NCBI GenBank assembly: GCA_051294905.1
Contig: CM119377.1
Span: 9,796,001-9,860,000, forward strand
Direction of reading: 5' to 3'
Length of the DNA stretch: 64,000 nucleotides
DNA from: Botryllus schlosseri
Taxonomy: Eukaryota
Each line of letters starts with the position of its first letter. Position 1 is the first letter of the stretch. Below, one piece after another: positions 1,634 through 63,959 of this stretch. A model generated the notes under the pieces. It ran no database searches and was not told the DNA's origin. It saw only the letters and a program-made list of their open reading frames with translations. The position numbers and the translations under genes were made by a program.

Positions 1634-2737
1634 AACCACCCCGTCTCGTAAGCCATCATCATCGACCACCGCACAATGTCAAGATCTCTGTTTCTCCAGA
1701 CAACTATCTCCTAATTTTTTTCCTTATGTAACGATAAATTCTAGCACCCGAATATAGTAAATATTCATCATCCACCACACAATCAGAATACCAAGCGCAT
1801 CCCTAACGCGCCTCGTAGACATGTGTATTTGCGATTATACTTCTCCCCATGGAGAATTTTTTTATGGATGAATTTTTAAAGTCGAAGAATTCACTTTCCT
1901 CATTATATGCTCGTTGTTTGTGTTTTGCATGCTATCTGCTATTCTCCTAAAATACTTTCGTCCCACACTAATAATACGGTGGACAAGGAATGACAAAAAG
2001 AAGTCCAAGATATGTTGCATTGATAATAATCGACCATGTCGATAATCGGTCGATTATTGGCACTGCTAAATAGCACTTTACCCATTCCCCGAAGCATTCA
2101 GTCTCTAGGGCAAATTTCCTAGTCTGATGATCGCAAAAATATGGCTCAGCAGGATTTTGAAATCCCAAGCCCCGTTTTAGTTATGCAACAATGTTCAACA
2201 CTATAAGAGGGTTGAAAAGATCATTGCTGCAAAAATACAAGATAAGTCAAAAATATTTCGCCATCCAAAAGGAAAGGTTTGGTGACCCCTGACATTAGTT
2301 ACGATGCCACACGTTATCACGTTACGTAAATACCCAATACCGTGCCGGAATGTCAAAATATTCCGACCAAACTAACTCAATATATTTGTTTTTCTTAGCG
2401 TGTAAATCTGTTTCTCGTGACAAATAACTCAAAAAGGATTTGGTTATGTAACAATAATTCAACCAACCCGTCTCGCACACCATCATCATCCACCACCACA
2501 CAATTTCAACATCTCTGTTCTGTCAATGTCTCAATCTGTTACTCCATGTAACTATCTCATAAATCGTTTCCTTATGTAACGATAAATTCTAGCACCAAGT
2601 AAATATTCATCATCCACCACGCAATCAGAATACTAAGTACGTCACTAACGCGCTTCGTAGACTGGTGTATTAGCTATTATATTTTTTCCCGTGAAGTAAG
2701 AAAGATATTTTTATGGACCATTGTATAAAGTAGAAAT

Positions 2738-3040
2738 TTGAATAGTATATTCATATTGAAATGAACCCGAATATTTTCGGCTGACACTCGTCAGGGGTAA
2801 TCGTCAGCAACTAGTAGAGAATTGGAAAGAACATTGTATATCACGTAACACAAAATATGACGTCACCAGCAAGAAATTTCGATTGAGAGAGCGTTCAATG
2901 TACTATTTTTAGGTGATTCACGAACTCCTTTTGTTGACAGAGTTTTGGTTGGTGTCTTTTGATAAAAGTCGACTCCAAGGCACACAAATGGAATTGTGAA
3001 CGGCCCCGCCCAAAGTAGAAATTTGACAACTTGCCGGTGA
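2738..3040 (-). mobile_element. Penelope-like element 3' fragment (GIY-YIG endonuclease C-terminus)
   Basis: Minus strand reads GRGRSQFHLCALESTFIKRHQPKLCQQKEFVNHLKIVH*. Homologous to 14810-15160. Confidence 0.7.
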
Positions 3041-3940
3041 TTTCACTTTCCTGAGTATTACTTGTTGTATGTGTTTTGCATGCTATCTGCTATTCTCGTA
3101 AAATACTTCCAACCCCACACAAATAATATGATAAAAGTACGGAATGAAAAAATAAGCTCGAAGATACGTTGCGTTGATAATCGCGCTTGATGTTAATATG
3201 TCGTTTAAAATTTCTTATTTGTCTCGGACCACCCTGAAACAGTTTACAAAAAAGCGGCGATCATTATTTTCTACGGAGCAAAATCCATGCCTGACACGTA
3301 TATCGCGGTATGGCTAAAGAGCATGACTTAATCGAATAGTGATTACATTGATGATATAACCAACGTATATGCTGACATTGTCAATTTATAATCACCCCAG
3401 TTTACAGACATTACAGCGCAGTATCAGTGGTGCTGTAGATGTCCCTTGAATCGCGATTTGTCAGGATGTCGGTCACGACGGTTACGACGGTTACGCTATA
3501 CCGAAATCGGGTCTGACTCCGACTAACGACCCAGTTTTCAGTTTTAAGATAACAACTCTGTACTAATTCTGTAAGCGTAATTGCCACTTCGACTCTTACT
3601 CAAAATTCTGACTCAAAATTCCAATACGAGCTGTATTAGAAAACTATCCAATTGCTTATCGTGAAAATTTGATTGCCACTCAAGTAACCGAAAATGACCC
3701 GAATCCCGACTCCGACAATTATAGTGACTATGCAGCCCTGTTGCGCTCACGTCGTCGTAGCGACATGACGGAAAATTTCAGATGGTCAGCTATCTCGCTA
3801 AACCGAGTAAATTCATTATTCGTCAATCAAAATTTTCTGCCAGATTCTAGCTTTCATCGCATTCATCGCGCAGGCCATACTGTTCGGAAAAAGTCACTTG
3901 CTGGAAACAGAGATACAGCTGGGGTGATGACAGTAAATAA

Positions 3941-4024
3941 TAAGGATGGTGTGGGCATGGTTGACGTTCGCGTTCGGTGTGCGAACCGCAGAAATTTGGA
4001 GGTTCGCGTTCACAAACCATCCTT
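3941..4024. mobile_element. Mini internally deleted copy of the TAGGGATGGTGTG MITE family
   Basis: aaggatggt...accatcctt ends. Internal gttcgcgtt...cagaaatt(t)ggaggtt resembles the ends of 39088-40088. Confidence 0.45.
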
Positions 4025-5845
4025 GGTGGATTCTACAAAAGCATAGACATGGCAACAAACAAGATTTGAGCCTGAATATGGAAACAGTGAATTTTAATTT
4101 TAATCTTTACGGCATAGTTTGCTGTATTGGCTTTATTGTGAACCTGGATTAGCCTACTCCCACGACGTTTACGTAGGCTACGTAATCGCGTTACTTAAAT
4201 AAATTAGACTTCATTCTAAATGCAGTTCTGGATCAGTTTATACAGTATATTTTTTGTCCGGGCATTAACATTAATGAATATGTTTTCTGGTCTAAATTCC
4301 CACGAACGTTTCGCGGGCCGCACAATACCCAGGTCTGCACCAACGCATGAAACAGTGCTGCTATAGAATTTTGAGTTGGGTTTCGTTTGCGACTTGTTTT
4401 GAAGCAAATAACTTGGGATTACCTGCTTGGGATTACCTGATCACGATCACATAAATCGATTCGGCCTACTAATACATGTCACTTCATTTTCATTGCTTGA
4501 CCATCATATGTTTACTATTGTCATTTTTCATTCGGTGTGCGGCATGATGCCTGATATTTAACTTTTTATTTTTTAGTCATGTTTAAGGTGGGTGTTTGAT
4601 TTCATTCACCATTCCAAACCGTTTCGATTTATTCCAATCGCATTTAATCGCAATCTTGTGGTGTTTTGAATTGATGAAATTTCAATAAACAGAGCAAAAC
4701 TGAACTGTATCATATTTTGAAAACAACAGAGCAGTCGGATTTTCGTTCGAAATGTGTATAGAATATCAGTTTACTTTTTAAACAATCATATAATATTCCC
4801 AGTTCATTTTGCTAAAGCGTATAACGCTGAGTCAGGAATACATGATACCGCACCGTGAAACAAAGAATGGATTCCCAAGTGAAGATACTGTATATTAATA
4901 TACTGTACAATCCTTTTCTGAAAAGCGTCAAGATTTTAACCTCAGTATTCTTCACAATGCTTTTGGGAAGTATAGGATTATGGTCCTTCTCTTCGATGAA
5001 AACGGTAAATCGCAACAAGCTTGCAATCGACAACTATACGATGTAATGGCTGCTTATCGTCTTTTATAAGTCTTCCTTGATTTGGCACCTTCATATAAAA
5101 AGAGAAGAATTAGCATTCTCCAAAATTGTACTTTGAACAGACACTGGAATGTAAAGTAGACGTCATAATTCCTTGTAATAATTGCTTACATTTAGTAACT
5201 TTTTTTGAAATCATCAAGAGCCAATGCCATGGACGAGGGATCCATGGACCCATCACCCTGATATGCTGTAAATCTCGAAAATAATTTTTCGATTTCAGTG
5301 CAACTAGACGCATTATACAAATGAAATTTCTAAGTCCCGCAAAAAGATCCCTTTTACTGGCAAATTCTTGTCGAGCAAATAATGAATTGTAAATCAGAGT
5401 CCACTTCAATAACTTTTCAAGGCGACCGCAACTGAATCTCTTGTCGCGTTTAGTATTGGAAGTGGGTGTAACTGTAATTAAGTAAGAAGTTTGTGTGTTT
5501 CGAATGAGCAATACTGTGTATTTCGGTTGAACTGATGCTATGCGGTTCCCTTGGTATACAAATAACAAGATAACTTGGCGGAGGTCTGCACTCCAGCTCT
5601 CGAGCGATGACCAATCCCAAGGTCAATTTCGAAGTATCTGTAGTATGGATTATTAGCACTGTCGATATCACTGAATAGGTATGATAGATTCTATCCCTAA
5701 AATAAACATCCAATGTTTATTCGCTATATTTATTGCCGTCATTGCAAGACAGCCACACGAATATTTCAAAATTCTAGCACTGACACTCAAGTACTCTCTA
5801 AATATATCCTGAGATTACGTGGGGGCAGTAAGCTTTCCACTATTC

Positions 5846-6957
5846 CAGGGGTGGGCAAACTACGGCCCGCGGGCCGCATGCGGCCCGCCAAGCCGTTTTG
5901 TGCGGCCCGCGAGAGTCTAAATAAACTTTTTCAAAATTTTGATAAAATGCGTACTAAAAATTGAATTAATGCAGGGATTTGATTAACTTTTCTTATTATA
6001 TGTCACCATGATAATTCTAGGACAGTGGTTTTCAAACTGGTGGGCGCACCCCCTTGGGGGCGTGAAAGCATCTGAAACGGGCGCGAAGCTGAGCTCGACT
6101 GAAAAAAATTTTCGCGCTACGCGCGATTTTCTTCCAATTCAATGTTATTGCTATGTATTTAGTCTGAATTACATATTTAAAAAGCTCTCATCCACAGTCG
6201 TAACCTTCCATGCCATCAAACTACCCGTTAGGTTTGCTACCATCCTGGTTGCGTTTTGTGATATGACGATAAGAGGCTGCGAAATATTTGACCATCATAA
6301 GGAGGGGGGCGTGTCTTAAAAAGTTGGAGAACCACTGATCTAAGGTAAATACTTAATATCACAGCGGGATAGCTGCAACAAGATTGACATAATTTGGATC
6401 ACCAGTGAGATTTTAGATTGCCCACTTCATTTTTAATTATTTCAGTGATGTGCTTATAAAAAACCGATTCGGGCGTGTCTTAAGCACATTCGTTGTCTGT
6501 ATGCGTGGAATGGGGGTATCTATATTTTATCTACACATAGTAGAAGCGTGTTTGAAGCTAACATGGTTATGATGCTGTTAGCATTGTGTGTCCTGGAACT
6601 GAGCCAAAAGTGGAATTAGTAAATCTATGAACAGATCACTGCTCACAGATTTATATTTCAATCCTATTCTAAGAATCGGGCAAACGGCCTTTTATCTTTA
6701 TAGTTTTGACAAATTGGTTATTGAGGTCCGCCTGCCTATGAAATCTCGCCACTGTATGTTTCTGACGCGTGTACGATATCATCAAAGCAATATTTGGCTT
6801 GTTTTAAATAAGCACATATATTGTCTCCACGTCCTCACTATATAATCACATATCAATATTATGTTTTGGGTTATAATCCCAATTTTATATAGTGCGGCCC
6901 GCGAATGAATTCAGATGTTGAATGCGGCCCGCGAGCTCAAAAGTTTGCCCACCCCTG
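5846..6957. mobile_element. hAT-type MITE (CAGGGGTGGGCAAACT TIR)
   Basis: TIRs at both ends and a perfect 8-bp TSD CACTATTC. Empty site in block B at ~53875. Confidence 0.9.
6023..6337. mobile_element. Nested hAT-type MITE (CAGTGGTTTTCAAACT...GAGAACCACTG)
   Basis: TIRs present. A second family copy lies at 44109-44410. TSD is degenerate. Confidence 0.8.
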
Positions 6958-7016
6958 CACTATTCTAATTTTATTATGCTCGCGACGGGGCAGTGATCCT
7001 CTATGTACAATGCTTT

Positions 7017-7704
7017 GAGTCCGTCTATTTTGTGCATGTCGACTATGTAGGCTATGTCGCAGCTATATGTCTACAATGGTCGGGGAGATGGATATTAGGG
7101 TTGGAGAGGGAAGTATTAGGGTTGGGGAGGGGATATTAGGGTTGAATGGGAGGGTATTAGGTGTGGAGCTGGGGATATTAGGGTTGGGGTGGGGGATATT
7201 GGGGTTGGAGGCGGATTAGGGTCAAAGTTGAGGTTAGGGTATAACAATATTAGGGGATGGAGTACCGTAATATTAGGGTTGGAGTGGGGGTCACGATACT
7301 CTCAACCCTAATATCCGTAACCCCCAACCATTATCTAGGGAGACCCTCACCCCAACCCCCCTACTACCCTAATCTTGGGATACCCCTACCTTAACCTTGA
7401 CCCAAACCCACCTCCGACCCTGTTATCCCCTTCTCCAACCCGAATACTCCCTCCCCAACCCTAATATCCCTCTCCCCCAACCCTAATATCCCTTTACCTC
7501 CACCCTAATATTCCCCTTCCCCAACCCGACCATAGTCGACATAACTGATACATAGCCGACATAACTGATACATAGCCGACATAGTCGACATGGCTGCGTC
7601 ATAGCCGACATAGCCGACATAGCTGCGACATAGCCGACATAGTCGACATAGCCGACATAGTCGATATAGTCGACATAGTCGACATGCACAAAGTAGACGG
7701 ACCC
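7017..7704. mobile_element. Foldback/MULE-like palindromic element with TTAGGG-containing subrepeats
   Basis: TIR gtccgtcta.tttgtgcatgtcgactat. Contains a G-rich arm (atattagggttgggg)n, its complementary C-rich arm and (catagccga)n repeats. Flanks CAATGCTTT/GAATTCTTT (7/9). Absent in block B. Confidence 0.75.
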
Positions 7705-10700
7705 GAATTCTTTTCAGGAAATAACCGAATGAAATTAGGGGGTTGTGAATACTTCATTGCTCCCCAATACAAAATGAATTATGATTCAACCGCAGTTCAC
7801 AAACTGGAATAACATTATGCTGTTCAATAAAGTAATAAAGTCCCTTTCGTCTCTCATCGGCAGCAAAGGAATGCATGTCGTTGTCCATGTCGAAATAGGG
7901 AATGTCGCCGACGTTCGTAGAACTGGCGTTAGTCATTCTTTTGCATCTCTAAGCATCCCATTATTGCGGCACCGTGAAAAGACAAGATGGCCTCAAAGGA
8001 ATTTGGCGATGCTAAAAACACAGATACAACAGCAGGTTACAACATTGAACATTGAAGTATGGCGGAGAGGATGGCAAAATTTGTTACCACCGATATAATA
8101 ACACAAAATTGGCGAACACAAGTATATCCAGGAGTGGGCAACACATCCACCCTGTCGCATTTCCAAAAGAGCCTTTTTTAAGCAAGACCAAGATGAACAG
8201 AATAACAGAAACACATCATACACACGGAGAAACAATACTTTTTCTGTCATAATAGAAACTGTCACACGCTCGACGATCGTGGTAAAATGAAATAACAAAC
8301 AAATGTTTCAACTTGGTAAAATTTTGTGACATAACCAATTGAACTCTATTGTGAACTTGAAATCGTCACTTTTCTCGACGCGCGAAGAGAACAATAATAT
8401 GAAGAGTTGCAGGCCTTTACATCGGCGGAGTCACGATACGAGGCTGTTGCCTTATACTAGTCGGTCAACACTCCGCAATGGAATTGAGTCGAGGTAGATC
8501 CCAAACCAAAAAGTTATCATAATAGGCCGAAGAATAAATATGTTTTCGATACCCGGTCTACGATGTTTGAAACGCTGTATAACGCCGAATTTGGGCTTAT
8601 GGTATAATAAAGTTCTATACCCCCAAGAAGATCTTCTGTTTTGAGAATAACAACCAGAAGATACTGGCCATACCTAAATAAATGCTACAACTTTGTGTCG
8701 TGTCAGTGTTATCCGGCCACGGGGGCATCGTTCTTGCTATGCATATCAGACAAAGCAGCTGATGTACCCTTCAAAGTTGTTCCTCGACTCATGCACCCGT
8801 GTCAGGTCAAGCTATACATAAATTGCGTGTGTCAACTAAACAAAAAAGGTTATCAGTGTCATCTGCCTTTCAAATTATGAGAAAATTGTTCAGACTGATT
8901 AATATAATGTGTACTGACAAAAAAGCGGCCAAAAATTGGCCCATTACAGAGCCTGATTACTAAAATTAGCTCGACAAAATCACGAGTTTTATCCACAGGA
9001 TGTTAACCACAGATGTCACCCTGTTCACCCTTTTGTACTGGTACACCCCATGTACATTTTTCTGCATCGTGGGGTGCACTGTGCGCACCGGTTGAAGAGC
9101 ACTAGCCTAAAGAACTGGGCTAGGGACAGTACGGAGTGTGTTTTAAGTCTATAAATTTTAACGTCGCAATTTCTTGACGAATAGGAACATAGTTGCGTAT
9201 TATCGGAAGTTGTACAGTTTCGAATCGTATGGAACGATCTTGCTCGTGGCTGATCTCGCTCCGTTCTAAGATTCCTGCTGATATGCGCTCGATGGTAACT
9301 CAAAATAGGCCGATTTGAACTCCGCGTCGGTGCCGTTGTTTTGCTTTGGACTCCTATCGCTGTTATACCAAAAACGAAATAGGCCAATAACAACGGGAAA
9401 TGTGTACATACATGTACTTATTATAATTGAAGATAATTAATGCAATTGTTGAATTCCTCATTTTTATGATTGAATATTAGGCGTGAACCTTCGGGTAATT
9501 TCCATACCAGTTGGAACTTTTATTACAACATACCGAGAGGCAGACAATTTCGCTGACATATCAGGCAACTTGAAAAACGATAATAAAAAGAAGATTGATT
9601 GTTTTTACAACTTCTGATCAAGGTCGCAATCCTCCCTTGCGATGAAAATTCAATGTATTCTATCACAGTAAAAATATGATTATTAATAGTAGTAACATCT
9701 TGATAGTAGCGCTTATAAGATCACGGGTTTTGTGCGGCACGTCTGTAAAAGTATAGGTCGAAGTATTGATGTTTGACGAATAGACTGCACTAATTCTCTT
9801 CGACACCGCGTGAATTTACATAATTTCGCCATCTGTAAATGTTTTGAAACGATGGATGAATACAATCTAGGTGCTAGCCTACTGTTAACTCACAATTCCC
9901 CGATTCAGAGGGAATCTATTCAATAGTATCCGCTATTGAAATTCCCGAAGCATTGCGTTTAAGGAACATTAATTCCATCAAGCAGTGGCGGCTCGTGACA
10001 ATATCGGGTGGTGGGGCAAGGGCTGCAAGCGACTTTTTATCAAGATGACGTCACAATGGCGTTTTCCAACGTAAACAAGTAACTTAATGATGGTACGGTA
10101 ACATGAATTTCCCGGCAACAATGATTTTAACGTATGTGCCACGAGAGGTCCGCTGGTGAGCTGTGACTTGAAGTGTGGTAACTGCGTAAACGGCGTACGG
10201 AACAAAGATTCAACACGGTTCATGTTCGCATTAGACCTGACTAATTATCTGCAGAAATGGAAATGACTATAACTCGAGAGATAGCGTAAGCCTAATTGGA
10301 AAGGTCAACGAATTCGGACAGATACGCAATTGTTATCTCATAGATTGGGCCTGTCCTATTGAATCCAAAACATCATTCTAAAGAACTAAGAATAGCAGCC
10401 TCGGAAATTTGGTCTCGGTAGTCGGTACAGCATAAGAGATTTTGGCCTTGAAACTGCAGACTGTAACACGACACATACGTTTTTATTACTGTCTTATAGG
10501 TCTGCTGCGAAATCGCCTTTGGAAAATATATTACCGAATAAATACGTGGATGAAAGCCTTAAACTTGGTACACTGTTACATGACATTATCGAGAAGTGGC
10601 CTCATGGCCCTTTTCGGTATGGTACACTGTCAAAATTAATGCGAACAGACCAACACCGAATTCTGCGTAAAATTTACTGAGGAATAGGCTGATCAAGTGA

Positions 10701-10739
10701 TCAGCTGTTAGCCGCCATCGAAAACCTAATAACTATCGC

Positions 10740-11709
10740 GCTTGACAGGGGGTTGTAAGCAAAGGGCTTGAAGACCACAATTTCACGGTGAAATTGACAT
10801 TGGAGAATATAATATCAAAGTAAATATTTGAATGCAAACTGAGAATGATATCATCATCTCAGTTAACGTTACCGCAGATACACCGGCTTTTGGGTGAAAT
10901 CCGCAATGTGTTGTAGGCTAAAGTGTCAGATCGGAGCACATCTTTACCATACTCGACCTTGATAACGAAATTACTGCCCTAATCATTGAGTGTCAACCTT
11001 GAGACTTGGCACAGCGTTCGATACTAAAATCAAGACATACCGTACAAAAGCTTATGACGGATCTAGGTAAGGAGCATCGTTAAAATCAATAGAGACCAAT
11101 ACCGGCTTTGCGTATAATCTGTTAGCGATAAATGACGAGTCTGCTCTCACTCGAATTAGGAAACGAAATTACCACTAACACAGTTCAGTGACAAACTTAA
11201 AACTTGGTACAGCGTTCGATACTAACATTAAGACTTACCGTGCCAAATGTCATAACCGATCTCAGTATTGAACATCGTCAAAACCAATGGATACCATTAC
11301 CGGCTTTTGAGTAAAATCTGTTTGCGATGCATGACGGATCAGCACACACTCAACTTCGGAAACGGAATTACTACCCTAAACTTTAAGTAGAAACCCTGAA
11401 ACTTGGGGCAGTGTTAAATACCACCATCACGACATGACATAACAAGTTTCAAGAGTTTTCATGGTGTGAAACCCCATTAAAATCGACCTATACCAGCAGA
11501 GGTCGACTAAACGCATATGACGGTAACAGAGTTTAGCTATAGATACGATTGTTACATCACACCTTAAGGGCACAGAGCTATCGTGCCCCGGTTGCTCGGT
11601 AATTTTATGAATAGGAGAGAGTAAATCACCGTTTCTTTATTGGGCGCGGCTTTGAGAGAATAGATAGTGAAAGCTTGTTATGAGCGCTACCGGGGCAAGC
11701 CCCGGCTAG
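10740..11709 (+). mobile_element. Probable non-autonomous Helitron/Helentron with ~200-bp internal tandem repeats
   Basis: Three diverged units (accggcttt at 10884, 11101, 11299; ...aaacttgg.acagcgttcgatacta). GC hairpin CCGGGGC-AA-GCCCCGG (11690-11705) is followed by CTAG. Lies in a block-A-specific insertion (~9935-11928). Confidence 0.45.
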
Positions 11710-12281
11710 GCATTCGCAAAGCGAAAACACAGAAGAGAATTCGATTTTCGCAGAGACTTCGCTATATATGGGCGTTTACAAGCGAAAGGACAAGAAGTAT
11801 ACGATTTTCGCTGTGATTTCGGTTTATATAGATAGGTGTGCGTCTATACATGGTAAAGAATTGTTATTTAACAGAATTTTAGGTGGGGCAATGCCCCAGT
11901 TGCCCTATAGGACGAGCCGCCACTGCCATCAAGTATACGGTTTTGATTGTAATTGTAAATGATTTCACGATGGCCACAATCGTGTCTTACAATGTTGCGA
12001 TCCTATCCCATGAATATAACACTGAATTATTTTGTATCCTTTGGAGAATAGCCGATAGAGCAGTGTGAGTAAACGTAATAATATCGTGGTTACAGTTGAC
12101 GGTAATAGCGACCTGCTCGCGGCAGTTCGTAGGAAAAATCAACCGTCCAAGGCTATTTTTCAACTTAATTTATCCTTCACAATGTCCTGCCTATATGTCT
12201 CGTATTGGAAATTTAATTTCCTTCTATACTTTCGTCAAGCGTGACATCGTAGGCTAAAGCTGTCTCAGTTTTGGAAATGCG

Positions 12282-12289
12282 CATAAAAA
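12282..12289 (+). promoter_or_regulatory. TATA-like element of gene 1
   Basis: CATAAAAA about 80 nt upstream of the ATG, conserved at 59691-59698 in gene 2. Confidence 0.45.
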
Positions 12290-12363
12290 CGTGGCGCACG
12301 GCGGCAGGTGAGCAGAATCGCTTCTGCGCAATAGCTGTATTCTTGGCTATATACTTGGACAAT

Positions 12364-12479
12364 ATGAAGTCTTTAATGTCATCAATCTTACTCGCGACAT
12401 GTGTCGCAATGCTTCTACACTCATTAACACAATGCGAAGCAAGGGTTCGCAGGACGAACATCCAAAGGTTTTATGGAAG
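12364..12479 (+). CDS. Secreted peptide precursor gene 1, exon 1 (signal peptide + RVRR)
   Basis: Reads MKSLMSSILLATCVAMLLHSLTQCEARVRRTNIQRFYG plus AG, followed by GTGAGT donor (phase 2). Hydrophobic core ends in C-E-A. The paralog at 59769 differs by 8/116 nt with no indels. Confidence 0.88.
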
Positions 12480-12777
12480 GTGAGTACTGGGTATACCAGA
12501 GATGTTCACACTTATGTTTGTAAATAAAATAGTCCTGAAACTGCTGATAATAACTATCGCCATACCGGTGACACTACGCAATGTAGCTCGTCAGAGATGG
12601 ATATGCGGTATAGACTTCTTACAGACGTGTGAGGCAAACTATATTCTAATCACTTCATTATACATTACATGAAGTCATGTTGAAGCTATCTTATTTCGAT
12701 CAATATGTTTATATGTAAATCATCACTTGATTTCATTACTGCATACTGTATATAATGTGTTCATTTTCTTATTTTAG

Positions 12778-12902
12778 CTTTGCAAACTCAGTGGTTCGCA
12801 ATTGCCGACCTCTCATGCGAGCGTCGTGCCACAGAGTTATTTACAAATGCAAAATCGGCGTTTTCCGACGAAAAAGAAACATTAACTCGGGATATGGTCG
12901 AG
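12778..12902 (+). CDS. Secreted peptide precursor gene 1, exon 2 (cationic Cys core + RRKR)
   Basis: ttttcttattttag acceptor and GTGAGA donor. Reads (S)FANSVVRNCRPLMRASCHRVIYKCKIGVFRRKRNINSGYGR, phase 2 to phase 1, in frame with exon 1. The paralog differs by 11/125 nt with no indels. Confidence 0.88.
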
Positions 12903-14809
12903 GTGAGATTAAAATCGACTTTTGTGACTTAACTGAAAGAAGCTTTAAGCGTAACCTACCGTATAGAGAATATAGCGCACATTTTAACGTTTTAATGTAA
13001 TGTTTCTACAATTTCAAAGGTTGGGCTGTGGTCAATAGAAGAAATGTCAAAAGAAGGAGACGAATCCATGCCAATTGCCTCACGTGCAGAAGCTGCATGT
13101 GAACACTGAATAACTCATCTACCATCGTATATTTTCATTTAAACCGGAAATATACGTGAATAATATTCACTGAATTTACACGAGAAGCAGAGGACTACTA
13201 TACGCAGACCTGAAACGATTGACTTCTGAGGAAATCTTAAGTCGGTCAATGAATTCCATTTGGTCGAAGTCATGAAGACGGAAGCAATGGAAACCCCCTG
13301 TCCTTACAACTTATTCGATTGGGATCCTAATTTGGACGGCTGTTCGCAAATGATGACAACCAAGCTACTGCAGTAACGTGACGTAGGAGCTGTTCGCCAC
13401 TTATAACATATATATATATATGTCCAGCTTGCAAAAGGCAGATATAGGATTGATTCGAAGTTATCGAAAGCCCAAGCTGACCATACCCGTGGAGCTATAA
13501 AGTCTGCTCCCTGACTTATACGGATTCAAGTGATCGCGAAAATAGTATATGGAAAGATGCATCCAAAAATAGAATGTCGAGAGACTTGTTAAATCTTAAA
13601 GATAGATGATAAATTCCTCTTTACCTATCCAACCGGACACTGTGACCATGAGTGTGGTGTTTAACACTCCTCTCTTATTTATTGTTCTTCAAATTGCATG
13701 TTTGATATTTGTCGATGTTCATATACAGTGTTACTACTCTCGGGGATTGCGATTCACGCGTATCGATAAGATGGCACCAGTTGTAATTGAAATATATGGC
13801 AATATTTATAAAGTAAGTGCGTGATTGTTTTTTACTAGGCCGTATAAAATCGTGACTATTTGAAATGTACCCAGATGTGATGAAATGTAAAAGTGGTGTG
13901 GGATGACAAGATTCCACGAAGGTAATATTCTCGAATATAGATTAGCATTCCAAGGTCGAATTTAAGAAAACGATCGCGAAAAATACGTGATAGTATTTTA
14001 GTTTTCCAGTATGAATTAGAGTTGATAAGGAAGATTTTTGTTGTTGTGACTCAGCAAAATTCAGAGGCTGCCCGAAAGCTTCCAGATCAGCCTAACCGTT
14101 CACCATGCAGGTTATGAAACGTTAAGAACGATTGCCCAATCCATCTTGAAAATTACATGGTATTTCTAATGTCGTAATGTTTCATTTTGAAGTACAACAG
14201 AATAGAGTAACATGTATTTAGATTGCGACTTGTGTGTTAATTGATTCTCGAGTTACTACCGAGATAGCTCAGACTTATTCAGTCGGTACAGTTTTCACTT
14301 GGTTGTTTTCTGCAACATCAATACTATACTGGACATATGTGGGCAAGTTCCTCAAGAAGTCGAGTGCTGGCCTTGAAAATTTAAATAAAAGGCAAGTACA
14401 CTGAATTATAAGTAATAGACGATATCATATCGGAACAAGTGAGGAAAATGAAGGTTCAAGTGTCGATGGGCGAGGTCGATATGCTAAAGATCTTGATCCG
14501 GCAATATCAAGCTTTGATTGTTATGTATATGTTTTTGTTATGGGGTATTTTTTATATACTCTGCTTGTTGACGAAGCAATAAAATCTCTCTCTCTCTCTG
14601 ACTAATTATTCAGCAACAGAATCCAGCAATTCCTAAACCTTGCAACCTTGCTCATCCTTATTCCGATTAGCATTGCTACGGATCCGGTGTATTATGTAGA
14701 TTAGGGTACACCATAGTGCTGAGTAACCGTTAGAAGGGTGTACCATTCCGGAAAAGGTTGAAAAGCACTGGTTTCAATTATAAAATGGGTGTGGTAATCA
14801 TAGTAGTCT

Positions 14810-15349
14810 TGAATAGTATATTCATATTGAAATCAACCCGGATATTTTCGGCTGACACCAAGGCCTACCAAAAACAGGCCATGCTGACACTCGTCAGGGG
14901 TAATCGTCAGCAACTAGTAGAGAATTCACAAGAACACCGTATATCAACAATCGTAGCACAAAATATGACATCACCAGCATGAAATCTCGAATACGAGAGC
15001 GTTCAATGTACTATTTTTAGATGATACGCGAACTCTTTTTGTTGACACAGCCTTGGCTGGTGTATTTTGATAAAAGTCGACTCCAAGGCACACAAATGAA
15101 AGTGTGAACGACCCTTTCCGAGTATGCAAAATCTGTCGTCTCGATAATTTTTCGCACCGGCGGGATTATCCAACAAGTGTTTGCCAATTGCAGAATTTAT
15201 GGCCTTTGATTGTTTCGCATCAATCTTGAGCGGATGAGTTGCGGGCTTCGGTGAAAAGCTCACCCTTAACTCATCCACTCAAGATTGATGCGGAACAATC
15301 AAAGGCCATAAATTCTGCAATGGCCAAACACTTGTTTGATAATCCCGCC
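14810..15349 (-). mobile_element. Penelope-like element fragment with inverted terminal duplication, in intron 2 of gene 1
   Basis: SAIGKHLLDNP...DDRFCILGKGRSHFHLCALESTFIKIHQPRLCQQKEF matches the PLE GIY-YIG C-terminal pattern. Arms 15159-15240 and 15268-15349 are inverted. Absent from the paralog. Confidence 0.78.
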
Positions 15350-15431
15350 TGGTCGTTGTGAAGCACAATATGGTTTAAAAGTGATGGTGATATTTCCCGG
15401 TATTTACACACGTGTGTTATACATGTCCCAG

Positions 15432-15520
15432 ATTTTCAAGGACAATGCATGTCCCGCAATTCCTTATACAATGTAATCCCCTCTTGGGAAGAAGATACGA
15501 CGCAATCCCTACTGGAGTAG
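15432..15520 (+). CDS. Secreted peptide precursor gene 1, exon 3 (acidic tail, stop)
   Basis: tgtcccag acceptor. Phase 1 gives (D)FQGQCMSRNSLYNVIPSWEEDTTQSLLE*. In this frame 3 differences to the paralog are synonymous (TGC/TGT, TCC/TCT, ACG/ACA). Total CDS 330 nt, 109 aa. An extra symmetric exon cannot be excluded. Confidence 0.7.
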
Positions 15521-15701
15521 AAATAACCGATATTCTATGGGTCAACAAGCTTAAAATTACGCGAAACGCTCGGACAATGTGGCTGATAGGCGCAGTTATG
15601 TGTCGAGCACGAACTCGCCCGAGCATTCATTTGAGTAATGCTGTTTCGTCTGGATATCGTATGAATTGTGCGAATTGTACCAACAAAGTATATAAGTACA
15701 T

Positions 15702-15707
15702 AATAAA
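15702..15707 (+). terminator. Candidate polyadenylation signal of gene 1
   Basis: First AATAAA I found after the stop codon at 15520. Confidence 0.35.
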
Positions 15708-17009: not shown

Positions 17010-17200
17010 CAGAGGTGGTCAAAGTAGTCAAGAAGGCTACTCAAGTAGAAGTAAAAGTGGCGACGAAAAAATCTACTCATGTACGGGTAGAAGTACTTCA
17101 TTCCTAGGTAACCTGAAACTACTTGAAGTAGAAGTAGAATTGACTGATTTTAAATCTAGTCAAGTAAGTAGTTGTGAAAACGATCGTAATTCGTTCGCAT
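17010..17200 (+). mobile_element. Partial copy of the CAGAGGTGGTCA hAT MITE family
   Basis: Reverse complement of the 42780-42971 end (agtagaagta repeats). Confidence 0.7.
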
Positions 17201-19278
17201 GGACTGCCAAAAGCTGCAAATGGAGCTATGCGGAAGGTGTAGGGAGCTTGATTCATATTGATGCATCCCAGGAGATGTCAATTTTTGACAGAATAAGCAG
17301 TCGTCCACATCATGGGATGTAAATGATAGTATTAACATCTATACGCGATACTTATCCTTTGTTTACTCGAACACCCCATTTTAAAGAATATCATGGCATG
17401 GCGCCCTCCCCCATATTATAATGCCCCTAGTTCAGTCAAAGAGCAATACGGAGAAGTTGTATCGGATACGGCTTTAACACTTTGCGCGATTAGTATACGT
17501 TAATTAAAAATATGGCAGATCTTTAAAATGCCATATAGTGTATAGCTTTATTTTCGGAAAATATAAGGCATTACTACACTTGCTTTTATACTTTAACATG
17601 TATGATCTCCTGAGAAAAGAACTGAAACTTTATTTAGAACTCAACGTTTATACTAGTAATGGAAGGAAAAATACAATAACTACTTCTATAAAGCGTAAAA
17701 TATATTTCATGTCTTTTGTCCATAAAGTTTCAACGGTGGTATACTAAAACAGGTCTGACGTTAAATAAAGTCAAAATCCACTTTTCCACATTAGGACACG
17801 TCATGGGCTGCTAGGTATAATAGGTAATTGCTAGTCGAATAGAAATAGAAGTAATGGGGTAAATTTCTAGAAGTAGCAATTTCAAAGACATTCCAAATTT
17901 ACTGCAGGTAGGTGTAGAAAATAAATATGCGAAAGGTACTCATGTAATTAATTTCAAAAACTAGATTCGGTCGATGAGTCGCCTACTTTTAGCAGTCCAT
18001 TGGGGGGGGGGGCAGTGCCCACTCTGTAAATTGCAGGGTGCATTTTCGCGAATAACACAGAATGAACAATGATACTTGGAATAGGCTCGATCTTCTAATA
18101 TAGATTTAGGTACCGTGATATAAGTGTTTTTCCGTCCCTTTGCCATGGACAGTTTCACTCTTTTACGTGATGAAAGAATATCGGTAAAAGTGAAATTAAA
18201 TACTGAACACCTCTGCTGATAATTTTTCGGCAGTTGTGTGGAAGTAAGTTAGTAAAAAAATGGAAGCACTGCTATTGGCTGCAATTAATTTTAATTTAAT
18301 TTATTTAAGTTTAAATAAACCAACTTTTTCCCCGAAAAAATTTCTCTCTCTCTCAAATTTCAAGGCTGACCCTCAGGATGGCGTCAGAGAGAGAAATATG
18401 ATGCTTCAGTGCGTAGTCACTGTTGCCTGGTTTCAAACGAGCCGTCAACCATGGTTGTAAATCGCGCGGTTCGTCAGATATGGAAAAATGGAAAATACAT
18501 AGAAAATGTACAAATGGGCGTGGTCAGTGAGTGGTCGTCAAGGTCAAGTTCATGATCAAGACTCAATCGGCCCTTACCGTTCAGTTTATGCCATGAAACA
18601 ACGCGATGTGCTTTCTTTCGTCGTATCCAACTATTTGCAGGCATAGTAAACCTGTTTATGACTCATATGCCGTCTGAATTTGCACTTGAACTTGACCTAG
18701 ATCTTGAAAATCACTGAAGCGTGACCAAAATTAACAGATCCCTCTCAGAAAACTCTCCAGAACACGTTTTGAAAATTGAAACGGTGAAAATTTACACAGA
18801 ATACCGTACATGTCGACTTCTGATGTTGTGGCAGATTTTCCGTCAATATTTCCCACTCGGAAAATATCTGGAAATTTCAGGTGATAACCATATTTTCATT
18901 TATTTTTTATTCATTTTTTATTTTTATGAACCCAAATTTTTGAGTAAGGTACCAAATGTATCGGAAAAGTCTTAGCTTTTCAGAACACGTAGTACCCGAT
19001 GTCTATGTTTATGGTATGTGATGATTATTCTTTCTTCGTGATCTCATCATTTGTGTTGATTACCCGCATGTTACCCTACCTATATATTGTATGTTTTTAT
19101 ATATCGCGTTAAGTTGCTTGAGTCTTCATTTAGTTAATAAAAACCAAATTTGCGTAGAGGTCGTAGTACGTTTTCAGTACAATTTTATAAACTAAACGAA
19201 CGGTGTCGTCTTTTCCGTAAAATACATGGCTGCATACAACGCGAAGCTCATCTGCGTACCAGTGTTGGAAGCGTAGTG

Positions 19279-22597: not shown

Positions 22598-24593
22598 TGT
22601 GTTATTTGACTTGTTTTAGGGGGAGGGGTCATCGCTGTTCTGTTTGGTCTTTTGGGGGAAAATTATTCCCGCATTACGTAATTTTATTGCTCTGTACCGG
22701 GAAAATGCCGTTAAATGGCAAAGTAACGAATTTGACATCTCTGCAGGAACTAGGTTATACAACAGAACCTTTCGAGTATCTCATACCCTACTAATTCAAC
22801 AAAAATTATAAATGAAACTTTTTACTGCAACTTTTGTGAAAATTGAATGAAACTTTTTCGCGATTTTAGTGCAACAAACACTTGCCCTACTAATATTACA
22901 AGATAGCAGATCTCATCAACGCAACTAAGGATACGTATTGAGGTGACTCATATACAATGGAAATGGACATATAAACTATCGACTGATTACATCTTCACAT
23001 CAGCACGAACAACCCACCACAACGAAACGGATTGACACGTCAGTAAAGCTATGACGCTTCACTGTCTAAAAGGCGCAACGATGGCTCAATATAGAACCGC
23101 AAAGAAGGCATTCTCGTGCCTGGAATCTCAGATAAATGTACACACGGATGTAAACCGGGGCCATTCGGAGATAGGCAAGGCATAGGAAGCGATATTATTG
23201 ATCCGAGCGAACTCCATAGGCTACGACTAAGAACGCAATGGGGATTCTATTCGTGCCGTCAAAATATGCAATTGTTCTGCTGGTGGTCGGGGTGGTGGTA
23301 TTGGACTGCGCGTCAGTTAACGCCATAATTGGAATTAAATTTCGAAAAGGATTCAGAATGATGAACGGGTACGTATCTTACAGCGAAAAAAATGCTTCCA
23401 AATAATCAAGTTTGGCCGGGCGGGGTTGTGGATGTAGATATTTCTATCAAGAAAGATCTATTTTACATACTTGTAAAAATGTTCCGCGGGCATTGTGTGA
23501 TGTAGGCCCTATTGCATATCTGGGATCACGGCGGTCGGTGGTAAATATGTGGTTGCCGACATGTCACTTGATTTAATGGTTAGAACGTTTTCCGATGCTT
23601 TTTATTCTTGAGAATATTATTATGTTCTTTATGTACAGTAAAACTGGTAAATACCCACATAATCCGGGAGGCAACCTGCCTCCAATACACGAAGAAGTTA
23701 GATCACAGAATTGCAATAGATGGAGAATTGGCAAGGGTTGCAGAAGTAAAGATGATTGAAAATGAAGAATCGAAATTACATAAATTATGTTGTGATATTC
23801 CAGTAGAAGTGTAGCTTAGTCCAGTGGCGCATTCAAGGTCTTTTGAAGGATCACCTATAAAGTGATTTTCTGGATCATGTCGAGTCGAACGATTCCCGGA
23901 ATTTCGTGGATAGGTCTCATGAGTTCATGTTTAATGCTCGTAACAGCAGATGCATCGAGCATCATTACATCGTCATGATCACGCCAGATGCACTCAGTTA
24001 TGTGTATTTAGTGTTAGGATAAAGTCACAAGTCATATCTAGTCACTGCAAACTCGAGTCAAATCGATTAATATTTTCTCAAAATTTTCGTCTCAAATTTC
24101 GAATCATCAAATATTTTCAGCTTATGCCGTTTTATTTCAATGTGCGGATGCAGATGCATAATTGCATCAAGGCTAGCGCTAGACCACGCCGAATCAGTCA
24201 AACTTGGTATCGTGCAATTTCTATACTACTAAAACGACATGAGTTTCCGCTGTCATTTATGTAAATTGATGAGAGGCTGCCCGCAGGACATGTTCCGTTC
24301 AATATAGTATGGGAGTATACCAACGTGTAAGTTATGTTTATTAATTGAAATGCTGCATGAGTGCTATAAAGGCAGCACCGATTGAAATAGGTGTGAAAGC
24401 GAAATCTGTTAGCGGAAAGTGCCGATGGCCTGATAGCAACCTGTATATAGTAGCTCATATATATGTTATGGCGAAAATCTGGTAAATACACCTATCTCCT
24501 ATGCATGAATTTGCATTGCAAAATACGAAGTTGGTCATGGTGAGCTAATCAGATTAGTAAACATAGACTAAGTTTGGGCTATGTAATTAGCAG

Positions 24594-24730
24594 GATCTTC
24601 AACCAGCTCGTGACAAATTGTGTTCCTATCGTTCGGGATATCTGCAGTAGGATGATGCGCAGATGCATGCATAGTACGTGGCGTGGCAAGAGGAGTATTT
24701 TGGATGCTGATATCACGATCGACTTACAAC
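24594..24730 (+). CDS. Divergent third paralog, exon 2 equivalent (gene or pseudogene; other exons unresolved)
   Basis: ttagcag acceptor and GTGAGT donor, 137 nt, phase 2 to phase 1 as in genes 1 and 2. Reads IFNQLVTNCVPIVRDICSRMMRRCMHSTWRGKRSILDADITIDLQ, with the same N..V.NC.P..R..C.R....C.....RxKR.I pattern. Confidence 0.72.
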
Positions 24731-27475: not shown

Positions 27476-29103
27476 GCCAGGGGTCGCCAGCTCAAAACGG
27501 ATCGCGGGTCACTTTTAAATTTCGAGGCCGCTGGCCGCATGAATTCAATAGGCCACACAGTTGAACAACCACGCTATTTCGTAACCTACTAAACCCTATA
27601 CAATGAATTGATAATGTATCGATTCAGCAATCCGGCCCGCCAAATATTTAATTTTCCTCTATCCGGCCCGCCGACTGGAGAAGTTGCCCGCCCCTGGCAC
27701 ACGGCGTATCAATTCAATTTCAACAACCATTGACACATCTGTGTCCGATTGCCGGATATCAAAATATCTGTATATAATTTCCAAGAAAATGTTTTTCATG
27801 CACAATCGAGCATTGCATTTGCCTCAATCGCAAATAATCTAGAGTTTCTAGACAGTCATTGCGATTCGCCTGGTTTCATAAACCTGTTTCAGTGTTTGAT
27901 ATTTAAAAATACAAAAGTGTTTCATGTTTTATAACGAAGATGTTGGCAATCACAGCGGTAAAAACCGAGATTGACAGCAGCAGAGCAAAGAATATAAAGC
28001 AAAGTATATATAAAAACACACAATTAGTATTTGTGTAATCTCGGGTAAGTTTACCGCAATATTGCCACTATGAGAACATTCCTGAAATACAGATTATCAT
28101 TGCGATTGCCACAGTGAGGAATATATCCTAAACATCGTGCCTTCATGCAGAATAATGAATAATATTGAAGGCATTGATTATGTTGGTGTGTGAGATGAAA
28201 GAGAGAATCGCCATCAATATGCCGTTGACATGCGGCGTCTTGTATGTAGTTTCTACGCTTAAACCTTTCTGCTTTGACAGTTTTCGAGAAATATGATTAT
28301 TTATTTGATAACATTCGATGAAAACGAAAGCGATTTCGAAGCGATCAATTATAGAAATAAGGGCTTTTGATTTTAACGAGTCTCCGATCGGAATGCCTAC
28401 AATGTTATAATTAAACGGTGAGCGCGATTTTAGATCCTGTTTACAATTGCTACCTATATATATCCGCGTCATTGGCGACGATACCTAAATTTCGTTTGAT
28501 GACGCGGCAAGACAAAATATCATATGATAAAAATCACTAAATCATGTGTTCTATGGGCTTCGATCAAGCGCACACGTTATCACCAAATTGCATATTTGCA
28601 AGACTTCGGTCACGTGATTGGTTACGCATAGGAACAGACGACTGGTTTAACAAGCTACTCGCTCGCTCATGCGTCTTTATGGCCAATTTCTCATTTTAAA
28701 CCTTCGTTTTAAAGTTGTAAAGGTATCAAAATATTGCTGCGATTGTAATTTGAGAGCTGGCTATATGTTCGGTTCGTGGGTCTTCTCCGGTAGTGGTTCT
28801 TATACTGTTATCGTCAAAAACACTCTGATTTACTTGGTGTTATATTGTCGTATTCTGGCATGTATAACATTACCACCATGGTCTTGTGTTCAGGTACCTG
28901 CTCATTTTATTGCTGCGTAAGTAGCAGTATAGATTAATTATAGAGTTAGTGTTCTTGTATATTCTGCTTGAAAATTATCGATATCTAGCGATTTTTTTTC
29001 TTGTAATATAAAATATTTAAACGGGGACACGATTTGGATGTGCTTTACATGGATGAACCCTGGATAAATGTTCCGTCTCGTCTATAGCGTGCATTGGTGA
29101 CAC

Positions 29104-34130: not shown

Positions 34131-34177
34131 GACACCGAACACAATGTCCGATCTAGCCTACACCGTTAAGGCGTAAG

Positions 34178-59698: not shown

Positions 59699-59768
59699 CG
59701 TGGTTCACGGCGGCTGGTGAGCAGAATCGCTAGTGCGCAATAGCTGTATTCTTGGCTAGTTGGACAAT

Positions 59769-59884
59769 ATGAAGTCTTTAATGTCATCAATCCTACTCGT
59801 GACATGTATCGCAATGCTCCTACACTCATTAACACATTGCGAAGCAAGGGTTCGTAGGACGAACATCCGAAGGTTTTCTGGAAG
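59769..59884 (+). CDS. Secreted peptide precursor gene 2, exon 1
   Basis: MKSLMSSILLVTCIAMLLHSLTHCEARVRRTNIRRFSG plus AG, followed by GTGAGT donor. Confidence 0.88.
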
Positions 59885-60183: not shown

Positions 60184-60308
60184 CTTTGCAAACTCTGTCG
60201 TTCGCAATTGCCGACCTATCATGCGAGCGCTGTGCCACAGAGTTATTTACAAATGCAAAATCGGCGTTTTCAGGCGAAAAAGAAGCATAAACACGGGATA
60301 TGGTCAAG
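60184..60308 (+). CDS. Secreted peptide precursor gene 2, exon 2
   Basis: ttcctacttcag acceptor and GTGAGA donor. Reads (S)FANSVVRNCRPIMRALCHRVIYKCKIGVFRRKRSINTGYGQ. Confidence 0.88.
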
Positions 60309-63885: not shown

Positions 63886-63959
63886 TTTTTCAAGGACAAT
63901 GTGTGGCCCGCAATTCTTTATACAATGTAATCCCCTCTTGGGAAGAAGATAAGACATAA
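63886..63959 (+). CDS. Secreted peptide precursor gene 2, exon 3
   Basis: tgtcacag acceptor. Reads (V)FQGQCVARNSLYNVIPSWEEDKT*. Total CDS 315 nt, 104 aa. Confidence 0.7.

What the first reader, a model, noticed from the sequence alone, without database searches (positions are those of the whole stretch)
12364..15520. Unrecognised family of secreted cationic Cys-peptide precursors in a gene cluster (gene 1; paralogs at 59769-63959 and 24594-24730)
Seen in sequence: splicing three exons with canonical GT-AG sites and compatible phases gives MKSLMSSILLATCVAMLLHSLTQCEA-RVRR-TNIQRFYGSFANSVVRNCRPLMRASCHRVIYKCKIGVF-RRKR-NINSGYGRDFQGQCMSRNSLYNVIPSWEEDTTQSLLE. Gene 2 has the same architecture. Exons 1 and 2 have no indels between paralogs, whereas the flanks have many. 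The 38-aa segment between the two R-x-R/K-R sites has 7 (gene 1) or 8 (gene 2) Arg+Lys and no acidic residue, and the tail is net acidic. Established knowledge: R-x-R/K-R is the furin-type convertase consensus, and signal + cationic peptide + anionic pro-tail is typical of prepro antimicrobial peptides, including ascidian ones. Inference: this is a clustered host-defence peptide or peptide-hormone family. I cannot match it to a named family.
Basis: partly seen in the sequence, partly recalled or inferred. Interest (0 to 1): 0.88.

Follow-up and report, generated by a model that had tools for sequence, protein, structure and literature searches.

The report
Orphan secreted cationic cysteine-peptide gene cluster
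A sea-squirt genome window carries three neighbouring small genes, with no detectable relatives, that each appear to encode a secreted precursor of a positively charged three-cysteine peptide followed by a cleavage site and an acidic tail; this is the layout of antimicrobial or hormone precursors, but neither expression nor activity has been shown.

Summary
Gene 1 splices exactly as written into a 109-aa ORF. Gene 2 is an intact 104-aa copy inside a segmental duplication. The exon at 24594-24730 is a real, very divergent third member, and I extended it to a candidate three-exon 122-aa gene with the same intron phases and the same layout.

Selection supports coding. The exons are 92% identical without indels, against 86-88% and 25 gap openings in flanking DNA. 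dN/dS is 0.34. The third copy keeps N..V.NC.P..R..C.R....C.....R.KR at 32% identity.

No relatives turned up in Pfam, PDB sequences, 5.8 billion protein clusters or 1.84 billion representatives, apart from one unspliced exon-2 ORF from another sequencing run.

Transcription is not shown. There are about seven clipped RNA reads on exons 1-2, from sister copies or alleles, and no junction.

Only the RxKR site after the core is conserved across the family; the N-terminal RVRR is not. Cysteine totals after the signal peptide are even only when the tail is counted (3+1, 3+1, 3+3). This suggests a disulfide-linked two-chain product.

The function, host defence or signalling, remains inference.

The parts
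12364..12479 (+). Gene 1 exon 1: ATG, signal-peptide-like region (cleavage predicted after ...TQCEA), RVRR, start of the cationic chain; donor GTGAGT, phase 2
12778..12902 (+). Gene 1 exon 2: 3-Cys cationic core (NCRPLMRASCHRVIYKC), RRKR convertase site, start of the tail; AG acceptor, donor GTGAGA
15432..15520 (+). Gene 1 exon 3: acidic tail with the conserved single Cys and the NVIPS motif, stop TAG
15702..15707 (+). AATAAA, a possible polyadenylation signal about 180 nt after the gene 1 stop (could be chance)
   Evidence: read directly
59769..59884 (+). Gene 2 exon 1 (8 substitutions against gene 1, no indel)
60184..60308 (+). Gene 2 exon 2 (11 substitutions against gene 1, no indel)
63886..63959 (+). 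Gene 2 exon 3, stop five codons earlier than in gene 1
23238..23368 (+). Gene 3 candidate exon 1: ATG, strongly hydrophobic signal-like segment, ...SVNA then a cationic start; donor GTACGT, phase 2 (candidate only)
24594..24730 (+). Gene 3 exon 2: divergent 3-Cys core (NCVPIVRDICSRMMRRC), RGKR; acceptor at the homologous codon position, same phases as gene 1 exon 2
28093..28193 (+). Gene 3 candidate exon 3: acidic tail with 3 Cys and the NIVPS motif; AG acceptor at the homologous position and phase, stop TGA

Best explanation
The window holds a tandem, same-strand cluster of three members of a lineage-restricted gene family. Two are recent duplicates and one is old and divergent. Each member is a three-exon gene for a 104-122-aa secreted prepropeptide. 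Shown from sequence: an N-terminal hydrophobic segment with a small residue at -1 and a small or neutral one at -3; a 38-44-aa core of net charge +7 to +8 with three cysteines at fixed spacing (C-x7-C-x6-C) and invariant Asn, Pro and Arg positions; an invariant R-x-K-R site; and a 32-45-aa acidic tail (-1 to -7) with one cysteine aligned in all members. Inferred mechanism: the precursor enters the ER and the signal peptide is removed after ...CEA (or ...VNA in gene 3). Disulfides form using core and tail cysteines together, since totals are even only when both are counted. A furin-type convertase then cuts after R-x-K-R in the late secretory pathway or in granules. The product is either a free cationic chain plus an acidic pro-piece, or, as I think slightly more likely, a disulfide-linked cationic/acidic two-chain peptide. 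Most likely role, by analogy only: a host-defence (membrane-active or microbe-binding) effector. My function split is roughly 40% host defence, 30% signalling peptide and 30% other secreted role. The organism is a colonial sea squirt according to an earlier scan note that I did not verify.
For: Exact exon structure and ORFs. Purifying selection between genes 1 and 2: exons are 92% identical with no indel, against 86-88% and 25 gap openings in non-coding DNA. dN/dS is 0.34 overall and 0.23 in the core, with dS 0.18, close to the non-coding divergence. Deep conservation: the third exon 2 keeps 13 invariant positions, including all three Cys, Pro and R-x-K-R, at 32% identity, with the acceptor at the same codon position and the same phases. 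Its candidate exon 3 is the best non-self match to the gene 1 tail in the whole window and starts after an AG at the homologous position and phase. Charge layout and Cys parity. Not a repeat or transposon ORF: only three copies in the window and one related ORF, P0001 from another run, among billions of proteins. Read coverage in one bulk RNA run is roughly 16-fold denser on exons 1-2 than on non-repeat intron. Precedent: the botryllin prepropeptide (signal, 37-aa mature peptide of about +11, C-terminal propeptide) and furin in morula-cell granules of Botryllus (PMC9966394).
Against: No splice junction or full transcript was seen. The roughly seven RNA reads are clipped, carry letters of sister copies or alleles, and none lies on exon 3. 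Such reads could also only map where copies are conserved, so DNA carry-over is not excluded. No indexed RNA run holds the exon words, and no spliced product is present in the protein collections. That is odd for a constitutive haemocyte AMP, which would be abundant. The hydrophobic moment is only marginally above shuffles (p 0.04 for genes 1 and 2, 0.11 for gene 3; not significant over the full 29-mer). The AF2 model of the core is a low-confidence single helix (pLDDT 62.6). Exons 1 and 3 of gene 3 are candidates only. Signal-peptide and cleavage predictions are rule-of-thumb, because neither SignalP nor ProP was available.
Confidence: 0.5

Rival explanations
1. The family encodes neuropeptide or peptide-hormone precursors. 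The cationic 3-Cys peptide, or the tail peptide, is released by prohormone convertases in a rare neuronal or endocrine cell type and acts on a receptor.
For: Signal peptide plus basic cleavage sites. Very low representation in bulk RNA and absence from assembled transcript-derived proteins fit expression in a rare cell type. The fixed Cys spacing and invariant Asn, Pro and Arg positions look like a folded ligand. Gene 3 ends its core in W-R-G-K-R, which could give a C-terminal amide.
Against: Genes 1 and 2 have no amidation Gly before RRKR. The sites are furin-type R-x-K-R rather than plain KR/RR pairs. Divergence between paralogs is fast (32% identity). No relatives were detected in other animals. 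The cationic core with a charge-balancing acidic tail is more typical of defence-peptide precursors. None of these points is decisive.
Confidence: 0.25
2. Another secreted role for a rapidly evolving small protein, for example in reproduction (gamete interaction), allorecognition or rejection effector, tunic or adhesive component, or a toxin-like peptide. The R-x-K-R cut would serve as a maturation step.
For: The genes form a lineage-restricted, tandemly duplicated, fast-diverging cluster. Expression is low or conditional. Net charge of core plus tail varies from 0 to +7 between members, which would be odd if all act as simple cationic AMPs while the chains stay linked.
Against: No positive evidence points to any particular one of these roles, and no domain or motif of known families was found.
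Confidence: 0.15
3. These are not functional genes. They are chance ORFs with chance GT-AG sites, preserved only because the segmental duplication is young, or decaying pseudogenes.
For: Splicing was not shown and only a handful of ambiguous reads exist. No spliced product appears in any protein collection. The gene 1/gene 2 comparison alone has limited power, with 26 substitutions.
Against: The third copy has lost detectable nucleotide similarity, yet it keeps the Cys framework, Pro, R-x-K-R, the exon boundaries and the phases. Its tail exon candidate has the right acceptor and phase. dN/dS is 0.34 with dS at the neutral level, and the coding sequence has no indel where about 4 would be expected. 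P0001, from another run, keeps the exon-2 reading frame with conservative changes.
Confidence: 0.1

Closest known systems
Botryllin and styelin-type ascidian antimicrobial prepropeptides (Botryllus schlosseri, Styela clava)
   Same: Both have a signal peptide, then a strongly cationic mature peptide of about 37-40 aa, then a C-terminal propeptide removed by proteolysis. Furin has been reported in the producing morula cells (PMC9966394). Both are small multi-exon genes of a colonial ascidian.
   Different: No detectable sequence similarity. Styelins and botryllin are not described as cysteine peptides, whereas this family has three fixed Cys in the core and a conserved Cys in the tail. Botryllin is constitutively and visibly transcribed; these genes are barely seen in RNA.
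Halocidin and dicynthaurin (Halocynthia aurantium)
   Same: They are cysteine-containing alpha-helical cationic ascidian AMPs that act as disulfide-linked dimers (PMC7024374). An odd number of Cys in the cationic chain here likewise calls for an inter-chain bond.
   Different: Those peptides have one Cys per chain and dimerise with a like chain. Here there are three Cys plus a Cys-bearing acidic tail from the same precursor. No homology was detected. The helix prediction here is weak.
Centrocins (sea urchin heterodimeric AMPs)
   Same: They comprise a cationic heavy chain (30 aa, amphipathic helix, carries the activity) and a second chain linked by one intermolecular disulfide (PMC8659048). 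This is the best functional analogue for the two-chain reading.
   Different: Different phylum and no sequence similarity. The centrocin light chain is 12 aa, against 32-45 aa and acidic here. Centrocins have one disulfide, against the two or three implied here. Centrocins carry bromo-Trp. That both centrocin chains come from one precursor is my recollection and was not checked here.
Furin-processed vertebrate Cys peptides (hepcidin, LEAP-2) and generic prohormones
   Same: They are small three-exon genes with a signal peptide and an R-x-K/R-R cleavage that releases a disulfide-bonded peptide (from my own knowledge, not tested here).
   Different: In those genes the active Cys peptide lies C-terminal to the cleavage site. 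Here the best-conserved, cationic part lies N-terminal to it. The Cys frameworks differ, and there is no Pfam or PDB sequence match.

Membership tests
Ascidian cationic AMP prepropeptide (functional kind: styelin/clavanin/botryllin-like layout) | Signal peptide, then a cationic mature peptide, then an anionic C-terminal extension | tested here: met
   Core net charge is +7, +8 and +7 and tail net charge is -3, -1 and -7 in genes 1, 2 and 3. The N-terminal h-region and the -3/-1 rule were read from the sequence.
Ascidian cationic AMP prepropeptide (functional kind: styelin/clavanin/botryllin-like layout) | Detectable sequence homology to a described AMP family | tested here: not met
   No Pfam family, no PDB sequence, and no protein other than P0001 in 5.8 billion clusters or 1.84 billion representatives.
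Ascidian cationic AMP prepropeptide (functional kind: styelin/clavanin/botryllin-like layout) | Amphipathic structure of the mature peptide | tested here: inconclusive
   The maximum 18-residue helical moment is 0.60-0.68, with p 0.04, 0.04 and 0.11 against shuffles. It is not significant over 29 residues. AF2 gives a single helix at pLDDT 62.6.
Ascidian cationic AMP prepropeptide (functional kind: styelin/clavanin/botryllin-like layout) | Expression in immunocytes and microbicidal activity | not testable with these tools
   Run, sample and tissue labels are coded, and the single read-laying run gave about 7 reads.
Neuropeptide / prohormone precursor | Signal peptide and peptide flanked by basic convertase sites | tested here: met
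   RVRR and RRKR in genes 1 and 2; RGKR in gene 3.
Neuropeptide / prohormone precursor | C-terminal Gly amidation signal or other typical neuropeptide processing marks | tested here: not met
   Genes 1 and 2 end the core in ...GVF-RRKR with no Gly. Only gene 3 has W-R-G-K-R, which is ambiguous.
Neuropeptide / prohormone precursor | Orthologues in other species, or neuronal or endocrine expression | tested here: inconclusive
   No relatives in the protein collections, but no eukaryotic genome search tool was available. The cell type is unknown.
Insulin/relaxin superfamily (two-chain, disulfide-linked) | Cys framework: B chain C-x11-C and A chain CC-x3-C-x8-C, six Cys in all | tested here: not met
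   The core is C-x7-C-x6-C. The tail has one Cys (genes 1 and 2) or C-x-C-x12-C (gene 3). The framework definition is from my own knowledge.
Centrocin-like two-chain AMP | Two chains from one precursor, each with Cys, separated by a cleavage site | tested here: met
   The tail Cys aligns in all three genes, R-x-K-R lies between core and tail, and Cys totals are even only when the two parts are counted together.
Centrocin-like two-chain AMP | An actual inter-chain disulfide in the mature product | not testable with these tools
   This needs non-reducing mass spectrometry. Spliced proteins could not be sent to the structure tools.
Pfam PF08131 Defensin_3 | Score at or above the gathering threshold (18 bits) | tested here: not met
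   12.5 bits, E 0.18, for gene 2 exon 2 only. This is chance level.

The most novel reading that the evidence does not exclude
The family makes a previously undescribed type of covalent two-chain peptide. A cationic 3-Cys chain would be disulfide-bonded to an acidic chain cut from the same precursor at a single R-x-K-R site. This would be a self-neutralised cationic/anionic heterodimer, whose net charge ranges from 0 to +7 among paralogs. It could be a new tunicate-specific class of defence or signalling molecules, unrelated in sequence to insulin-like or centrocin-like two-chain peptides.
Probability: 0.2. Interest if true: 0.65.

Novelty: new member of a known kind. Interest (0 to 1): 0.42.

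Why it matters
Small secreted peptide genes are systematically missed by annotation, and tunicates are the closest invertebrate relatives of vertebrates. If these genes are expressed, they add an orphan, fast-evolving family of processed cysteine peptides to the ascidian repertoire. They could be new antimicrobial scaffolds; ascidian AMPs are actively mined. They could instead be unknown ligands. The conserved Cys in the supposed pro-piece makes a testable prediction, a two-chain product, which would be unusual. The practical value is modest until expression and activity are shown.

Tried and rejected
1. RNA evidence. That repeat, not the gene, explains why runs X1 and X24 'hold' the stretch. 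Only about 7 clipped reads touch exons 1-2, and no exon junction was listed. A second run search restricted to exon 1-intron 1-exon 2 found no RNA holder.

2. Homology. Pfam on the whole protein and on each exon found nothing above threshold. PDB sequences gave nothing. The word-indexed search gave only P0001, an exon-2 ORF that reads through into the intron. Its contig DNA could not be fetched. The exhaustive HMMER search added only P0002. I reject P0002 as a false positive: it is a translated tandem repeat with ten weak partial matches and no Cys. A search with the gene 3 exon-2 ORF found nothing.

3. Structure. AF2 of the exon-2 peptide alone gave a low-confidence helix, which I did not take to fold searches.

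4. An apparent exon-1 remnant at 24124-24252, upstream of gene 3 exon 2 (weak tblastn match, E 8.5), was rejected. It has no hydrophobic signal segment and its donor phase is incompatible.

5. The TATA-like TATATA at 12348-12353 lies too close to the ATG to serve it, so I treat it as chance.

6. The idea of a continuous amphipathic helix with a Cys stripe was weakened by shuffle controls.

7. A literature search for the peptide strings found no paper.
Full report
**Observation**

- Exons 12364-12479, 12778-12902 and 15432-15520 on the + strand are 116, 125 and 89 nt.
- The donors are GTGAGT and GTGAGA, and the acceptors are AG.
- They give a 330-nt ORF and the 109-aa product as written.
- An AATAAA lies at 15702-15707, about 180 nt after the stop.

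A tblastn of this protein against the window finds each exon a second time at 59769, 60176 and 63888. It also finds exon 2 a third time at 24601-24750 (32% identity, E 2e-4).

Gene 2 (59769-59884, 60184-60308, 63886-63959) has the same exon 1 and 2 lengths and the same splice signals. It is intact at 104 aa. A CAA>TAA change ends it five codons early.

**Context**

A self-comparison of the window shows that genes 1 and 2 lie in a large segmental duplication, block 83-15546 against 51692-64000, at 75-88% identity. Gene 3 sits between them on the same strand. Nothing else in the window was recognisable:
- five ORFs over 130 aa have no real Pfam match (one sub-threshold ComP_DUS hit, E 0.006);
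- there are no Rfam families and no tRNAs.

An earlier scan note calls the organism a colonial sea squirt. I did not verify this.

**Is it coding?**

Evidence from genes 1 and 2:
- In a global alignment of 11927-14030 with 59344-61411, exons 1 and 2 are 93.1% and 91.2% identical with no gap. The upstream flank and introns are 85.7-87.9% identical with 25 gap openings in about 1,860 bp.
- Nei-Gojobori counting over 104 codons gives 11.5 synonymous and 14.5 non-synonymous changes. dS is 0.18, about the non-coding divergence. dN is 0.063. dN/dS is 0.34 overall and 0.23 in the segment from RVRR to RRKR.
- This is moderate but consistent evidence for purifying selection on both copies.

Evidence from gene 3, which is stronger:
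- Nucleotide similarity is gone, yet the exon at 24594-24730 is bounded by AG and GTGAGT.
- It starts at the homologous codon position, with 1 nt completing a codon and then eight residues to the first Cys.
- It leaves in the same phase.
- It keeps 13 invariant positions across four sequences: N..V.NC.P..R..C.R....C.....R.KR.I.
- A six-frame HMM scan finds only these three exons in the window, so this is not a dispersed repeat.

**Extending gene 3**

I looked for its other exons.
- Upstream: the most hydrophobic ATG-initiated ORF ending in a phase-2 GT donor is 23238-23368. It has a long hydrophobic stretch, then ...SVNA, then a cationic start, and its donor is GTACGT.
- Downstream: the best non-self local match to the gene 1 tail anywhere in the window, on either strand, is at 28086 (score 39; the next best are 37 and 33).
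- The frame of that match begins right after an AG, with the same two-base 'AT' codon completion as exon 3 of gene 1.
- Joined, the three pieces give a 369-nt ORF and a 122-aa product with the family layout.
- I treat exons 1 and 3 of gene 3 as candidates.

**Anatomy of the products**

| Feature | Gene 1 | Gene 2 | Gene 3 (candidate) |
|---|---|---|---|
| Predicted end of signal peptide | ...TQCEA | ...THCEA | ...SVNA |
| Core length | 38 aa | 38 aa | 44 aa |
| Core net charge | +7 | +8 | +7 |
| Cleavage site after core | RRKR | RRKR | RGKR |
| Tail length | 37 aa | 32 aa | 45 aa |
| Tail net charge | -3 | -1 | -7 |
| Cys in core + tail | 3+1 | 3+1 | 3+3 |

The three core cysteines have the same spacing, C-x7-C-x6-C, in all members.

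- The RVRR of genes 1 and 2 follows the predicted signal-peptidase site directly and has no counterpart in gene 3. Only the site after the core is a family feature, so the mature cationic chain may include RVRR.
- The tail is not featureless. One Cys and an N-[VI]-[IV]-P-S motif align in all three genes. The number of Cys after the signal peptide is even only when core and tail are counted together. This suggests that the tail is disulfide-bonded to the core before cleavage and could stay attached as a second chain. Another first-stage note on this stretch raised the same idea. The gene 3 parity is new support, but it rests on a candidate exon.

**Structure hints are weak**
- AF2 on the exon-2 peptide with the four-row alignment gives one long helix at pLDDT 62.6.
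- The best 18-residue helical hydrophobic moment is 0.60-0.68. It beats shuffles only marginally, at p 0.04, 0.04 and 0.11.
- The moment over 29 residues is not significant.
- Spliced proteins are not accepted by the Atlas, and I did not send them to the structure tools.

**Relatives**
- Pfam finds nothing for the whole protein or for any exon. The only output is a sub-threshold Defensin_3 hit (12.5 bits against an 18-bit cutoff) for one exon.
- PDB sequences give nothing.
- The 5.8-billion-cluster search returns only P0001. This is a 77-aa ORF from a Logan contig of another run. It is exon 2 read through into the intron and carries four amino-acid differences from gene 2.
- The exhaustive search of 1.84 billion representatives with the exon-2 profile adds only P0002. 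This is a translated tandem repeat without Cys that scores by summing ten weak partial matches, and I discard it.
- The gene 3 ORF has no relatives.
- No paper in the library prints these peptide strings.
- The family is therefore an orphan as far as these tools can see. No eukaryotic genome search was available, so absence from other tunicates is not established.

**Transcription**

The single read-laying run used two contig runs and two 2026 bulk RNA runs.
- The high share of words in X1 and X24 comes entirely from an interspersed repeat inside intron 2 (14767-15400).
- In X5, with about 6% of the run read, four reads lie on exon 1, all in one orientation.
- Those four reads carry 12432C, 12450G and 12464G. 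This combination is neither gene 1 nor gene 2. It encodes the gene 2 amino acids with different synonymous codons, so a further copy or allele exists.
- Three reads lie on exon 2 with gene 2 letters.
- Intron 1 has no reads and exon 3 has none. The non-repeat part of intron 2 has a few.
- Coverage is about 16 times denser on exons 1-2 than on unique intron. However, reads from diverged copies can only be laid where the copies are conserved, so this does not prove mature mRNA.
- No exon junction was listed. X9 had no reads.
- A second run search limited to exon 1-intron 1-exon 2 found only a probable DNA holder.
- Expression is therefore unproven and at best low in whole-colony RNA.

**Interpretation**

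I am fairly confident (about 0.8-0.85) that these are real protein-coding genes for secreted, convertase-processed, disulfide-bonded small proteins.

The function is inference. Points that favour host defence:
- the cationic core balanced by an acidic C-terminal part;
- tandem duplication with fast divergence;
- lineage restriction;
- ascidian precedents. Botryllin has a signal peptide, a 37-aa mature peptide of about +11 and a C-terminal propeptide, and furin is reported in morula-cell granules (PMC9966394). Halocidin and dicynthaurin are Cys-containing helical dimers (PMC7024374).

Sea-urchin centrocins show that a cationic chain disulfide-linked to a second chain can be an AMP (PMC8659048).

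Points against host defence:
- The near-absence from bulk RNA fits a rare neuronal or endocrine cell type, or conditional expression, better than a constitutive haemocyte product.
- If the chains stay linked, gene 3 would have net charge near zero.

I therefore split function at roughly 40% host defence, 30% signalling peptide and 30% other secreted role. About 10% overall remains for 'not a functional gene'.

**Novelty and score**

This is a new, unannotated orphan family within a well-known kind: small secreted prepropeptides with a cationic Cys peptide and an acidic extension. The possible two-chain cationic/acidic product is the only feature that would set it apart. Interest is moderate, because there is no expression or activity evidence.

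Noticed in passing
window 14767-15400 (inside intron 2 of gene 1); related copy at 2780-3006: An interspersed repeat with very high depth in RNA-run contigs (summed word depth up to about 41,000 in X1) and tens of reads per base in both orientations in bulk RNA runs. It has many variant letters and element boundaries near 14809, 14883 and 14926. It is a transcribed repeat family, with no tRNA or Rfam match. It is also why RNA runs seemed to 'hold' the gene.
   Followed up: partly
window 83-15546 versus 51692-64000: A segmental duplication of at least 12-15 kb at 75-88% identity, broken by insertions. It carries genes 1 and 2 at its 3' ends. The second copy runs off the window end, so further family members may lie beyond 64000.
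   Followed up: partly
window 12424-12479 (reads of run X5): RNA-library reads on exon 1 carry 12432C, 12450G and 12464G. This combination is found in neither gene 1 nor gene 2. It encodes His and Arg as in gene 2 but with different synonymous codons. At least one more close copy or a divergent allele exists in the sequenced animals.
   Followed up: partly
window 47702-48073: A tandem array with a period of about 50 bp (self-matches offset by about 51, 100 and 150 bp, 84-87% identity). It looks like a minisatellite.
   Followed up: no
window 17010-17814 / 42971-42177; 29103-30036 / 57562-56620; 33518-34178 / 40091-39425; 35632-36330 / 36810-37495: Several inverted and direct repeat pairs of 0.3-0.9 kb at 80-92% identity, presumably copies of transposable elements. 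The only long ORF in the window (32196-32924, 242 aa) has no Pfam match.
   Followed up: no
protein P0002 (not in the window): The exhaustive HMMER search returned a 683-aa translated tandem repeat at E 4e-12, built from ten weak partial matches to 'RVIYKCKIGVFRRKRSI'-like text without Cys. It shows how repeats inflate scores for short profiles.
   Followed up: yes
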